Source of the DNA: Stylophora pistillata
Lineage: Eukaryota
NCBI RefSeq assembly: GCF_002571385.2
Contig: NW_019217916.1
Coordinates: 1-64,000 of the forward strand
Direction: 5' to 3'
Length of the DNA stretch: 64,000 bases
In this document: positions 47,808-49,502 of the stretch, piece after piece
How positions within the stretch are numbered: position 1 is the stretch's first letter
How the letters are laid out: every line of letters starts with the position of its first letter
Notes under the pieces: model-generated
Told to the model about the DNA's origin: nothing
The model's database searches: none
The model's input: only the letters and a program-made list of their open reading frames with translations
Program-made: the position numbers and the translations under genes

Positions 47808-47939
47808 GTCTATACTGGTATTTAGGTGAAGTTATTTTAACCCTTTACCTCTGAACATTGGTTGGCAAACTCTCCTCTACTGTTCTATATCCCTTCCTAT
47901 AATTCTCTCAAGGAGAATTTGACTAACAATCAAAAGTTT
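47808..47939. repeat. 132-bp direct repeat, left copy
   Basis: GTCTATACTGG...CAAAAGTTT repeated at 49371-49502 with 3 substitutions. Confidence 0.95.
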
Positions 47940-48804
47940 AACAACAACAAACATATGAAACATATGTATGAACTGCGGTTATGAAACGTATATGTGCACG
48001 ATCCTTCGCAGTAAAGCACTATTTGAGCAATAGTGAAAATCAGACCTGAAAAAAAAATTTCAGGCCTGTACGGGATTCGAACCACTGACCTCTGCGATAC
48101 TAGTGCAGCGCTCTACCAATTGAGCTAACAAGCCAACTGGGAGCAGGCCATCAAATTAATTCGACATAAACCCGTAGATGATAAATCAAACAACAACAAA
48201 CATATGAAACATATGTATGAACTGCGGTTATGAAACGTATATGTGCACGATCCTTCGCAGTAAAGCACTATTTGAGCAATAGTGAAAATCAGACCTGAAA
48301 AAAAAATTTCAGGCCTGTACGGGATTCGAACCACTGACCTCTGCGATACTAGTGCAGCGCTCTACCAATTGAGCTAACAAGCCAACTGGGAGCAGGCCAT
48401 CAAATTAATTCGACATAAACCCGTAGATGATAAATCAAACAACAACAAACATATGAAACATATGTATGAACTGCGGTTATGAAACGTATATGTGCACGAT
48501 CCTTCGCAGTAAAGCACTATTTGAGCAATAGTGAAAATCAGACCTGAAAAAAAAATTTCAGGCCTGTACGGGATTCGAACCACTGACCTCTGCGATACTA
48601 GTGCAGCGCTCTACCAATTGAGCTAACAAGCCAACTGGGAGCAGGCCATCAAATTAATTCGACATAAACCCGTAGATGATAAATCAAACAACAACAAACA
48701 TATGAAACATATGTGTGAACTGCGGTTATGAGACGTATATGAGAACGATCCTTCGCAGTAAAGCACTATTTGAGCAATAGTGAAAATCAGACCTGAAAAA
48801 AAAA
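47940..48804 (-). mobile_element. Tandem array (~3.5 x 249 bp) of a tRNA-Thr(AGT)-like structured repeat
   Basis: Period 249; tRNA-like 73-mers at 48062-48134, 48311-48383, 48560-48632 (acceptor GGCTTGT/ACAGGCC, D stem GCTC/GAGC, loop CTAGTAT, TTCGAAT); mismatches in T and anticodon stems. Confidence 0.92.
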
Positions 48805-49358
48805 GCCCAGAATGCACTACCATCAAAAAGTTCATGAGAAGCAATTTCTGGGTCGAATAATTCATACCCATGTCCTTGTATGTCTAGCAGCATGAGTTTT
48901 TTGTCTGACTTTTCATAAGAAAAATGGGTTAGACATTGAGCCTTCTGACCCATAACATCTGTTTCCTCGACACAACAATCACCAGTATTGTTTAAGTACT
49001 TGGTAAACTGTCCATCAATAAACTCCTCCACAGTCACAAATTCTCCTTTATCATCTTTACCGTCGTAGATCTTTCTATACCTTACGACCTCTCCAAATGC
49101 ATCAATAGCATGTTTTTCAATGATTTTTTGTTCCAACTGGTGAGCAAAATTCCTTGCAAGAAGATGCATCTGAACCACCTTTTGGGTGTGTTGTTGGACA
49201 GTTTGCCCATTGTCATTTATTCCCTTCACAGCATCAGGAAGGTATCTTATAATGACCCAGGTAGTACCCTTGAACTGTGGGTGCTTTGTGGTTGCTTTGT
49301 ATGCATTGTGAAACCCACCGTGAGCAAATGGCTCTTTTTCTTCATTGAATTCGACAGT
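48805..49358 (-). pseudogene. Intronless alpha-kinase (eEF2K/TRPM7-kinase-like) domain fragment
   Basis: Open frame TVEFNEEKEPFAHGGFHNAYKA...VVQMHLLARNFA...TVEEFIDGQFTKYLNNTG...AQCLTHFSYEKS..LLDIQG..LFDPEI; no native start, cut off by the repeat array before the GxxNLG and Zn-binding Cys motifs. Confidence 0.88.
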
Positions 49359-49370
49359 TATTATTATACA

Positions 49371-49502
49371 GTCTATACTGGTATTTAGGTGAAGTTATTT
49401 TAACCCTTTGCCTCTGAACATTGGTTGGCAAGCTCTCCTCTACTGTTCTATATCCCTTCTTATAATTCTCTCAAGGAGAATTTGACTAACAATCAAAAGT
49501 TT
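49371..49502. repeat. 132-bp direct repeat, right copy; runs into a full piggyBac-like MITE (49400-49590)
   Basis: Match to 47808-47939; TTAACCCTTTG...GGGTGTAAAGGGCTA. Confidence 0.9.

What the first reader, a model, noticed from the sequence alone, without database searches (positions are those of the whole stretch)
47808..49502. Composite insertion: alpha-kinase fragment fused to a tandem tRNA-like array inside a 132-bp direct repeat
Seen: on the minus strand the order is [132-bp repeat] - short AT filler - 554 bp of intronless alpha-kinase frame - 3.5 tandem 249-bp tRNA-like units - [132-bp repeat]. Kinase and tRNA-like units are in the same sense, the kinase is cut at both ends, and the duplicated segment includes the 5' half of a MITE that is complete only on the right. 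Inference: one reverse-transcription event that copied the repeat RNA several times, jumped to an alpha-kinase RNA and resolved with an unusually long target duplication. This would be a route by which a small non-coding retroelement captures and spreads kinase sequence. Caveat: the two 132-bp copies differ at 3 sites while units 1-3 are identical, so haplotype merging or repeat collapse in the assembly is possible.
Basis: partly seen in the sequence, partly recalled or inferred. Interest (0 to 1): 0.8.

Follow-up and report, generated by a model that had tools for sequence, protein, structure and literature searches.

The report
Composite repeat insertion, doubtful long duplication
In a coral genome, one arm of a very abundant tRNA-like tandem repeat is joined to a piece of a kinase-carrying DNA transposon. 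The 132-bp "target duplication" around it most likely consists of the two alleles of one segment placed side by side by the assembly, so the case is largely ordinary.

Summary
The anatomy is in the assembly exactly as described: 132-bp direct repeat, 3.5 units of 249 bp with tRNA-Thr-like modules, and a 554-bp alpha-kinase frame on the same strand.

1. The kinase piece does not come from a kinase mRNA. It is the inner segment of a ~1.27-kb transposon with ~300-bp terminal inverted repeats (at least 25 copies) and carries that family's own junction sequences at both ends.
2. The tRNA-like unit is a hyper-abundant retro-repeat (thousands of units). It normally inserts as two head-to-head arms with 11-12-bp target duplications, as Penelope-like elements do. 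This scan had already found it on other DNA of this genome.
3. An empty allele with a single 132-bp copy exists in another individual.
4. In two other samples, including the probable source, the two repeat copies occur as two variants, each at haploid depth. They behave as alleles, not as a duplication.
5. Three of 20 other array loci in this assembly show the same kind of long, allele-like flanking repeat, each joined by a single N.

Most likely this is a hemizygous composite insertion plus a haplotype-merging artefact. A true 132-bp target duplication keeps about 20% probability. The kinase-array junction is unique, so there is no sign that it spreads.

The parts
47808..47939 (.). Left copy of the 132-bp direct repeat (variant 'a': A, A, C at 47847, 47869, 47897)
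   Evidence: In runs X1 and X2 a 111-bp contig identical to this variant sits at about half the flank depth.
47807..47807 (.). Base just outside the left repeat copy: C in the assembly, G in the contigs of X1 and X2
   Evidence: table 3. In X1 it is the only difference from the window across 947 bp of left flank.
47940..48804 (-). One arm (3.47 units of 249 bp) of the tRNA-like tandem retro-repeat. Its 3' end at 47940 is the family's canonical end (...GTTGTTGTT). Its 5' end at 48804 lies in the unit's T-run.
   Evidence: Units 1-3 are identical to each other. All four T-runs are T9, whereas about 300 units at other loci are T7.
48062..48134 (-). tRNA-Thr(AGT)-like module followed directly by a T-run. 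The same module recurs at 48311-48383 and 48560-48632.
   Evidence: ARAGORN and Rfam RF00005 at 48.9 bits. No hammerhead or other Rfam family at E<=1.
48676..48804 (-). Partial 4th unit, of the second sub-family (GTTCTCATATACGTCTCAT type)
   Evidence: This 27-mer has 2199 matches in the genome. The same variant sits at contig ends next to N gaps in L032, L034, L036 and L043.
48799..49371 (-). Inner segment of a ~1.27-kb TIR transposon family that carries an alpha-kinase fragment. The open kinase frame is 48805-49358.
   Evidence: At least 30 matches at 91-96% identity. In L003-L011 the segment lies between ~300-bp inverted repeats, and family-specific ends are present. Pfam Alpha_kinase E 7.8e-28.
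49371..49502 (.). Right copy of the 132-bp direct repeat (variant 'b': G, G, T)
   Evidence: It is identical to the single copy in the empty allele of X7 and to a half-depth 111-bp contig in X1 and X2.
49395..49580 (.).
   Evidence: 40 scored matches out of 88 candidates, 70-85% identity, covering query positions ~24-163/208. No inverted termini found.

Best explanation
The locus carries a hemizygous, population-polymorphic insertion lying between a methyltransferase-like ORF and a PARP12-like gene of a coral. The insertion is a chimera of two unrelated mobile sequences.

(a) One arm of the genome's hyper-abundant 247/249-bp tRNA-like tandem repeat. This family normally integrates in the manner of Penelope-like retroelements, by target-primed reverse transcription. 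That gives tandem units, an inverted 5'-truncated second arm, 11-12-bp target duplications, and a ~46-nt extra 'tail' at one end only.

(b) The inner segment of a non-autonomous TIR DNA transposon that long ago picked up an alpha-kinase fragment.

The join lies in the unit's T-run, opposite the U-rich inner edge of the transposon's right TIR (GGGTTTGTTT). The most likely origin is therefore a template switch of the copying polymerase from the repeat RNA to a transcript containing such a transposon. This step is inferred, not shown.

The 132-bp direct repeat is most likely not a target duplication. The contig of the insertion haplotype (C at 47807, variant a, array, kinase piece) dead-ends. The assembly then continues with the empty haplotype (variant b, right flank), so the two alleles of one single-copy segment stand in tandem. 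What follows the kinase piece on the real insertion chromosome is unknown.
For: Shown:
- Empty allele: in X7 one 2114-bp contig joins 47807 to 49371 and carries variant b.
- In X1 (closest to the assembly: 1 difference in 947 bp of left flank) and in X2, both variants exist as 111-bp contigs at 7.7/8.3 against ~18 in the flank, and at 53.6/51.6 against ~90. That is one a and one b per diploid genome. Flank contigs break only at this bubble. Any genotype containing the assembled duplication predicts 1:2, 2:1 or full depth.
- The three repeat differences are exactly these segregating variants.
- The same artefact occurs elsewhere in this assembly. L040 (110 bp, 0 mismatches), L033 (161 bp, 3 mismatches plus a 21-bp indel) and L039 (1282 bp, 45 mismatches) have long repeats flanking single-arm arrays, with a single N just before the second copy.
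- Two-arm arrays have exact 11-12-bp duplications in L031, L034, L036, L037 and L042.
- The array's end at 47940 is the canonical family end.
- The kinase piece belongs to the TIR family.
- Short-read assemblies are known to mishandle Penelope-type tandem/inverted insertions (PMC8557442).
- GIY-YIG domains are very numerous in this genome: 1590 candidates, with open frames up to 1825 aa.
Against: - There is no N at the kinase/right-repeat junction (49370|49371). A junction inside an N-free stretch normally needs reads that span it, and I found no natural way for an assembler to create it.
- The three comparison loci all carry an N at the equivalent place; this one does not.
- It is not proven that X1 is the sample the assembly was made from.
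- Only Logan contigs, not raw reads, could be laid. They drop low-depth links to high-copy repeats, so the absence of junction contigs proves nothing.
- All T-runs of this array share a private T9 length, including the one at the kinase junction. This speaks for a coherent real local structure, at least up to that junction.
Confidence: 0.55

Rival explanations
1. The structure is real as assembled. One target-primed reverse-transcription event copied a multimeric or circular repeat RNA for 3.5 units. It then switched at the T-run to a transcript of a kinase-carrying TIR transposon, and was resolved by a second-strand break 132 bp away, giving a true 132-bp target duplication. The a/b difference between the copies is a phasing error: an assembly graph with a two-branch bubble that must be crossed twice will use each branch once.
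For: All three junctions are clean and free of N. The 3' end is canonical. There is T/U-rich microhomology at the array-kinase junction. The empty allele has exactly one copy. An assembly-specific base (47807) lies right at the repeat boundary. The length of the target duplication made by Penelope-like elements is variable in principle (PMC8557442).
Against: The dosage of variants a and b is 1:1 at haploid depth in X1 and X2, which excludes this allele in those samples. It would therefore have to be a rare allele of an unsampled source individual. At five loci, two-arm arrays with resolved ends have duplications of 11-12 bp. The other long flanking repeats in this assembly are N-joined and allele-like.
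Confidence: 0.2
2. The duplication is real but arose at the DNA level. Either a double-strand break was repaired by template-switching synthesis that copied from an array and from a TIR-element copy, or two or more successive events (tandem duplication, insertion, deletion) built the composite.
For: The kinase piece is 94-96% identical to every sampled copy and has no near-identical donor, whereas the array units are identical to one another. This would fit parts of different age. The piece starts within 1-2 nt of the family's internal deletion junction and ends 8 nt into the right TIR, boundaries that could reflect structure in DNA.
Against: The same dosage argument applies against any duplication. 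No TIR sequence is left at the locus, so a simple nested insertion is excluded. The array end is a canonical retro-insertion end.
Confidence: 0.1
3. The interior is also an assembly chimera. The kinase piece does not belong to this locus at all, and both the array-kinase and the kinase-repeat junctions are false joins made while closing a gap in an unresolved two-arm array.
For: The array-kinase join lies in a homopolymer. The 4th unit switches to the sub-family seen at contig ends beside N gaps in four other loci. Window-private kinase letters at 49058, 49064, 49085, 49177, 49210 and 49249 are not seen in any X1 contig. The best run holds only 0.75 of the sampled words.
Against: Gap closers need overlapping reads, and there is no shared sequence longer than 1-9 nt at either join. 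Contigs drop single-copy variants of multi-copy families, so the missing letters prove little. The T9 length at the junction matches the neighbouring units.
Confidence: 0.12

Closest known systems
Insertions of Penelope-like elements (PLEs) and their non-autonomous passengers, the metazoan non-LTR retrozymes (PMC8557442; PMC7229834; bioRxiv 10.64898/2026.07.22.740005)
   Same: Tandem head-to-tail units of ~230-250 bp in a stony coral, frequent 5' truncation, an adjacent inverted 5'-truncated copy, variable target duplications (11-12 bp here), an extra tail at one end only (ends at unit position ~200-204 versus 249), and trouble in short-read assemblies.
   Different: No hammerhead ribozyme (Rfam); a tRNA-like Pol III module sits in its place. 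In this window only one arm is present, and it is fused to foreign sequence. No autonomous partner sharing the 3' end was identified here.
Chimeric retrocopies made by reverse-transcriptase template switching (for example U6-L1 and other LINE-mediated chimeras in mammals; from my own knowledge)
   Same: A 3' part from the mobile RNA and a 5' part from another RNA in the same orientation, joined at a short microhomology.
   Different: The second template would be a transcript of a DNA transposon, not a cellular small RNA or mRNA. The enzyme would be of the Penelope type. The event is not shown to be at the RNA level.
Gene-fragment-carrying TIR transposons (Pack-MULE-like elements; from my own knowledge)
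   Same: The kinase donor family has ~300-bp terminal inverted repeats, short target duplications (~6 bp), an internal captured host gene fragment (alpha-kinase) and dozens of copies. A longer version with more of the gene exists.
   Different: The superfamily is not identified, and the ~6-bp duplication is not the 9-11 bp of Mutator. This concerns the donor, not the window's insertion.
Heterotype false duplications in heterozygous short-read assemblies (both haplotypes placed in tandem; from my own knowledge)
   Same: The two copies differ exactly at segregating allelic sites, each is at haploid depth, and the second copy starts right after the first site where assembly and read contigs differ. 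The same assembly has three clear N-joined cases beside the same repeat family.
   Different: Here no N marks the join, and 566 bp of foreign repeat lie before the second copy.

Membership tests
Target-site duplication of a retro-insertion (for the 132-bp repeat) | Both copies lie on the same chromosome, so an insertion carrier has three or more copies per diploid genome | tested here: not met
   X1 and X2 hold one a and one b per diploid genome (7.7/8.3 versus ~18; 53.6/51.6 versus ~90), with no third variant. This is valid only for those samples and rests on contigs, not raw reads.
Target-site duplication of a retro-insertion (for the 132-bp repeat) | The empty allele carries exactly one copy | tested here: met
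   The X7 contig joins 47807 to 49371, skipping 1563 bp. A false duplication also predicts this.
Target-site duplication of a retro-insertion (for the 132-bp repeat) | Length typical of the family | tested here: not met
   Resolved two-arm arrays have 11-12 bp (L031, L034, L036, L037, L042).
Penelope-type insertion (array family) | Partial tandems plus an adjacent inverted 5'-truncated copy | tested here: met
   Head-to-head arms are seen in L031, L032, L034, L036-L038, L042, L047 and L048. They are not present in the window itself.
Penelope-type insertion (array family) | Variable-length target duplication and a 30-40-bp tail at one end only | tested here: met
   Exact 11-12-bp duplications (9-13 bp when the ambiguous end bases are counted by eye). 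The outer ends lie at unit position 249 on one arm and ~200-204 on the other, a difference of 45-49 nt. Criteria taken from PMC8557442.
Penelope-type insertion (array family) | An autonomous RT/GIY-YIG element sharing the 3' end | not tested
   Only the abundance of GIY-YIG domains was seen (1590 candidates).
Retrozyme | Self-cleaving hammerhead ribozyme in each unit | tested here: not met
   Rfam scan at E<=1 over 47000-50500 finds only tRNA.
Retrozyme | Circular RNA intermediate | not testable with these tools
tRNA-derived SINE | tRNA-like head at the 5' end of each insert, which is dispersed as single copies | tested here: not met
   The tRNA module starts ~55 nt inside the unit and is followed at once by a T-run. 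The inserts are tandem arrays with permuted starts.
Functional alpha-kinase gene | Complete catalytic domain within a gene | tested here: not met
   The Pfam match covers profile positions 1-157 of 185. The frame is cut at both ends by repeat sequence.
Gene-fragment-carrying TIR DNA transposon (donor of the kinase piece) | Terminal inverted repeats, target duplication, many copies, an internal host-gene fragment | tested here: met
   TIRs of ~300 bp at 86-91% identity. Ends read TATGGTGGCC...GGCCACCATA with ~6-bp duplications in L004, L006, L007 and L011. There are 81 candidates. The kinase fragment lies between the TIRs.

The most novel reading that the evidence does not exclude
The structure is real as assembled. 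A Penelope-type reverse transcriptase, copying the ribozyme-free tRNA-like repeat, switched to a transcript of a kinase-carrying DNA transposon and integrated the chimera with a 132-bp target duplication. That would show that these tandem retro-repeats can pick up foreign sequence at their 5' end, and that single-arm insertions are resolved by distant second-strand breaks.
Probability: 0.2. Interest if true: 0.55.

Novelty: new member of a known kind. Interest (0 to 1): 0.25.

Why it matters
If the composite and its long duplication were real, it would be a rare snapshot of how Penelope-mobilised repeats resolve integration and pick up foreign sequence.

As it stands, the main value is cautionary. 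In this short-read coral assembly, hemizygous insertions of the tRNA-like repeat are often followed by the other haplotype's copy of the flank. This mimics long target duplications in 4 of 21 loci examined. Surveys of this repeat family for 'long TSDs' or 'captured 5' sequence' must be done on long reads.

A side result is that alpha-kinase fragments in this genome are spread by a TIR DNA transposon, not by the retro-repeat.

Tried and rejected
- Independent DNA holding the locus. A scan of metagenome contigs with a 29-mer from the 132-bp segment found nothing. Exact look-ups of the ORFs that cross the array-kinase junction (82 aa) and the kinase-repeat junction (92 aa), and of the neighbouring 430-aa ORF, found nothing on record.
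- Nested insertion (array inserted into a resident TIR element): rejected. No TIR sequence remains at the locus, and the array end abuts unique DNA directly.
- Kinase piece as an exon or a back-spliced circle: considered because its ends resemble AG|...|GT. Dropped because the upstream sequence is purine-rich and the idea explains neither junction.
- Direct capture from an alpha-kinase gene: rejected. The longer, gene-like version (L012, 91% identical) diverges from the window exactly where the short TIR family does.
- SINE reading of the unit: rejected (see membership test).
- The 8-nt resemblance (CATTCTGG) between the 20 nt after the L039 array and the kinase-piece end appears to be chance. 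The 20-mer is unique among the loci held.
- Other N positions in the window (4060, 45840 and three N runs) have no flanking allelic repeats.

Full report
**Observation.**
- A 132-bp direct repeat lies at 47808-47939 and 49371-49502, with three differences.
- A 249-bp tandem array of 3.5 units spans 47940-48804.
- The minus strand carries three tRNA-Thr(AGT)-like modules (ARAGORN; Rfam tRNA 48.9 bits). Each is followed at once by a hairpin with a T-run.
- On the same strand, an open 184-codon frame at 48805-49358 matches Pfam Alpha_kinase at E 7.8e-28 but covers only profile positions 1-157 of 185.
- No N lies between 45841 and 50237.
- The genome is 398 Mb in 5513 contigs. Run labels indicate a coral.
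- The locus lies between a methyltransferase-like ORF and a PARP12-like gene (CCCH zinc finger, WWE and PARP domains), about 355 bp upstream of the latter's first ATG.

**The kinase piece.**
- It has at least 30 relatives in the genome at 91-96% identity. Most end at the same two boundaries.
- In L003-L011 the piece sits inside a ~1.27-kb element with ~300-bp terminal inverted repeats. The element's ends read TATGGTGGCC...GGCCACCATA, with ~6-bp target duplications. There are 81 candidate TIR copies.
- A longer version (L012, and C1831 by coordinates) has the same left TIR followed by a fuller alpha-kinase pseudogene. The 1.27-kb family is therefore an internal-deletion derivative.
- The window piece begins 1-2 nt from that family's 5' deletion junction (CT|GTATAAT) and ends with ATTCTGGG, the first 8 nt of the right TIR. 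Its donor was thus a copy of this transposon family, not a kinase mRNA.
- It is as far from each copy (94-96%) as the copies are from one another, and no near-identical donor is assembled. It is the only full-length copy, among 13 segments compared, without stop codons; a truncated 471-bp second copy in L009 also has none.
- Why its 5' end coincides with the family's deletion junction is unexplained.

**The tRNA-like unit.**
- It is hyper-abundant: 569 candidate places for one unit, 234 matches among the 40 scored, mostly at 97-99% identity. A second sub-family gives 2199 hits for a single 27-mer.
- At 20 other loci, arms start at variable unit positions. They end either at unit position 249 (...GTTGTTGTT) or at ~200-204 (...CACATATAC).
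- Many loci hold two head-to-head arms, one with each kind of end. Five of these have exact 11-12-bp target duplications flush with the arrays.
- Tandem units, an inverted 5'-truncated copy, variable duplications, a tail at one end only, and trouble in short-read assemblies are the published hallmarks of Penelope-like element insertions (PMC8557442).
- Stony corals have ~225-245-bp hammerhead retrozymes that are thought to use that machinery (PMC7229834; bioRxiv 10.64898/2026.07.22.740005).
- The unit here has no hammerhead. GIY-YIG domains are very numerous in this genome.
- Earlier notes of this scan reached the same reading on other DNA of this genome. I confirmed the insertion geometry but not the partner element.
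- The window's arm ends at 47940 in the canonical ...GTTGTTGTT end. That junction therefore looks like a genuine insertion junction.
- The arm's units share a private T9 run, whereas about 300 units at other loci have T7.

**The direct repeat.** Contigs of four public runs were laid on 46900-50400.
- X7, an independent sample, has a single 2114-bp contig that goes from 47807 straight to 49371. This is an empty allele with one 132-bp copy, of variant b.
- X1 is probably the source: it shows 1 difference in 947 bp of left flank, against 4 in X2 and at least 6 in X7. In X1 and X2 the flank contigs break only at the bubble formed by the three variable sites.
- In those two runs both variants are present as 111-bp contigs identical to the left and right copies. 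Depths are 7.7 and 8.3 against about 18, and 53.6 and 51.6 against about 90. No third variant is seen.
- That amounts to one a and one b per diploid genome. Every genotype that contains the assembled duplication predicts 1:2, 2:1 or full depth. In these samples a and b are therefore alleles of a single-copy segment.
- The base just outside the left copy (47807) is the only place where the X1 contig differs from the left flank of the assembly.
- Limits: only Logan contigs were available. They drop low-depth links to high-copy repeats, so the absence of junction-spanning contigs is not evidence.

**The same pattern elsewhere in this assembly.** Of 20 other array loci, three single-arm arrays are flanked by long direct repeats. 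In each, a single N stands directly before the second copy.
- L040: 110 bp with one homopolymer gap.
- L033: 161 bp with 3 mismatches and a 21-bp indel.
- L039: 1282 bp with 45 mismatches.

These are contigs of the insertion haplotype that dead-end in the array, followed by the contig of the empty haplotype. They are false, allelic duplications. The window's case has the same layout and the same allele-like differences. It differs in having no N, and in carrying the kinase piece before the second copy.

**Weighing.**
- Against the artefact reading: a clean, N-free junction at 49370|49371 normally needs reads that span it. I found no simple way for an assembler to invent it.
- For the artefact reading: the dosage in two samples, the exact identity of the two copies with segregating alleles, the position of the repeat boundary next to a variable base, and the three parallel cases.
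- Probabilities: about 0.55 that the 132-bp repeat is a haplotype merge around a real hemizygous composite insertion; 0.2 that it is a true long target duplication from one retro-event; 0.1 for a real duplication of DNA-level or multi-step origin; and 0.12 that the interior is itself chimeric.
- The array-kinase junction lies in the unit's T-run, opposite the U-rich inner edge of the right TIR (GGGTTTGTTT in the family, GGGC plus T9 in the window). This fits a template switch but does not prove one.
- Both internal junctions are unique in the assembly. The composite has therefore not spread, and no parent element exists elsewhere.

**Verdict.** The 'kinase RNA capture' is replaced by a fragment of a transposon that already spreads the kinase piece. 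The 'unusually long target duplication' is probably an assembly artefact.

Noticed in passing
L004:1055-2320 (G000:C100), likewise L003, L005-L011; longer version L012 (G000:C37:3970-7517) and G000:C1831:7481-9007: A ~1.27-kb non-autonomous DNA transposon family with ~300-bp terminal inverted repeats, ~6-bp target duplications and an internal alpha-kinase fragment (at least 25 copies). A longer, older version carries a fuller alpha-kinase pseudogene running through to the GNLS...HKCN..C end of the domain, with 3 stops. The superfamily is not identified.
   Followed up: partly
L040:1670-1778 / 2822-2931; L033:1503-1642 / 2660-2820; L039:660-1935 / 3011-4289: Long direct repeats flank single-arm tRNA-like arrays, each with one N just before the second copy and with allele-like differences. 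They look like false duplications from haplotype merging at hemizygous insertions.
   Followed up: yes
window 48676-48804; G000 genome-wide: The tRNA-like repeat has at least two sub-families (GTGCACATATACGTTTCAT and GTTCTCATATACGTCTCAT). The second alone gives 2199 pattern hits. Units elsewhere are 247 bp (T7), while the window's are 249 bp (T9).
   Followed up: partly
window 48149 and 48647 (minus-strand 5' side of the tRNA-like module): In all four runs, some contigs leave the unit exactly upstream of the tRNA-like module and continue with GTTAAGTTGATT..., part of a small palindrome. This suggests a related repeat family that shares the tRNA-like module but has a different leader.
   Followed up: no
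G000, e.g. C28:799427-799681, C1108:48984-49220, C379:303375-303641: GIY-YIG nuclease domains are extremely numerous (1590 candidates), some inside open frames of 1300-1800 aa. These are candidate autonomous Penelope-like elements, not examined further.
   Followed up: no
window 48799-49371: The window's kinase piece is the only full-length copy, among 13 segments compared, with no stop codon in frame (190 codons); a truncated 471-bp second copy in L009 also has none. It differs from the family majority at only 17 positions. Its 5' end falls within 1-2 nt of the family's internal deletion junction. Neither coincidence is explained.
   Followed up: partly
window 43177-44469 (+) and 49857-55269 (+): Neighbouring genes are a methyltransferase-like ORF upstream and a PARP12-like gene downstream (CCCH zinc finger, WWE, PARP catalytic domain). 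The PARP12-like gene's first ATG lies ~355 bp from the right repeat copy, so the polymorphic insertion sits in its likely promoter region.
   Followed up: partly
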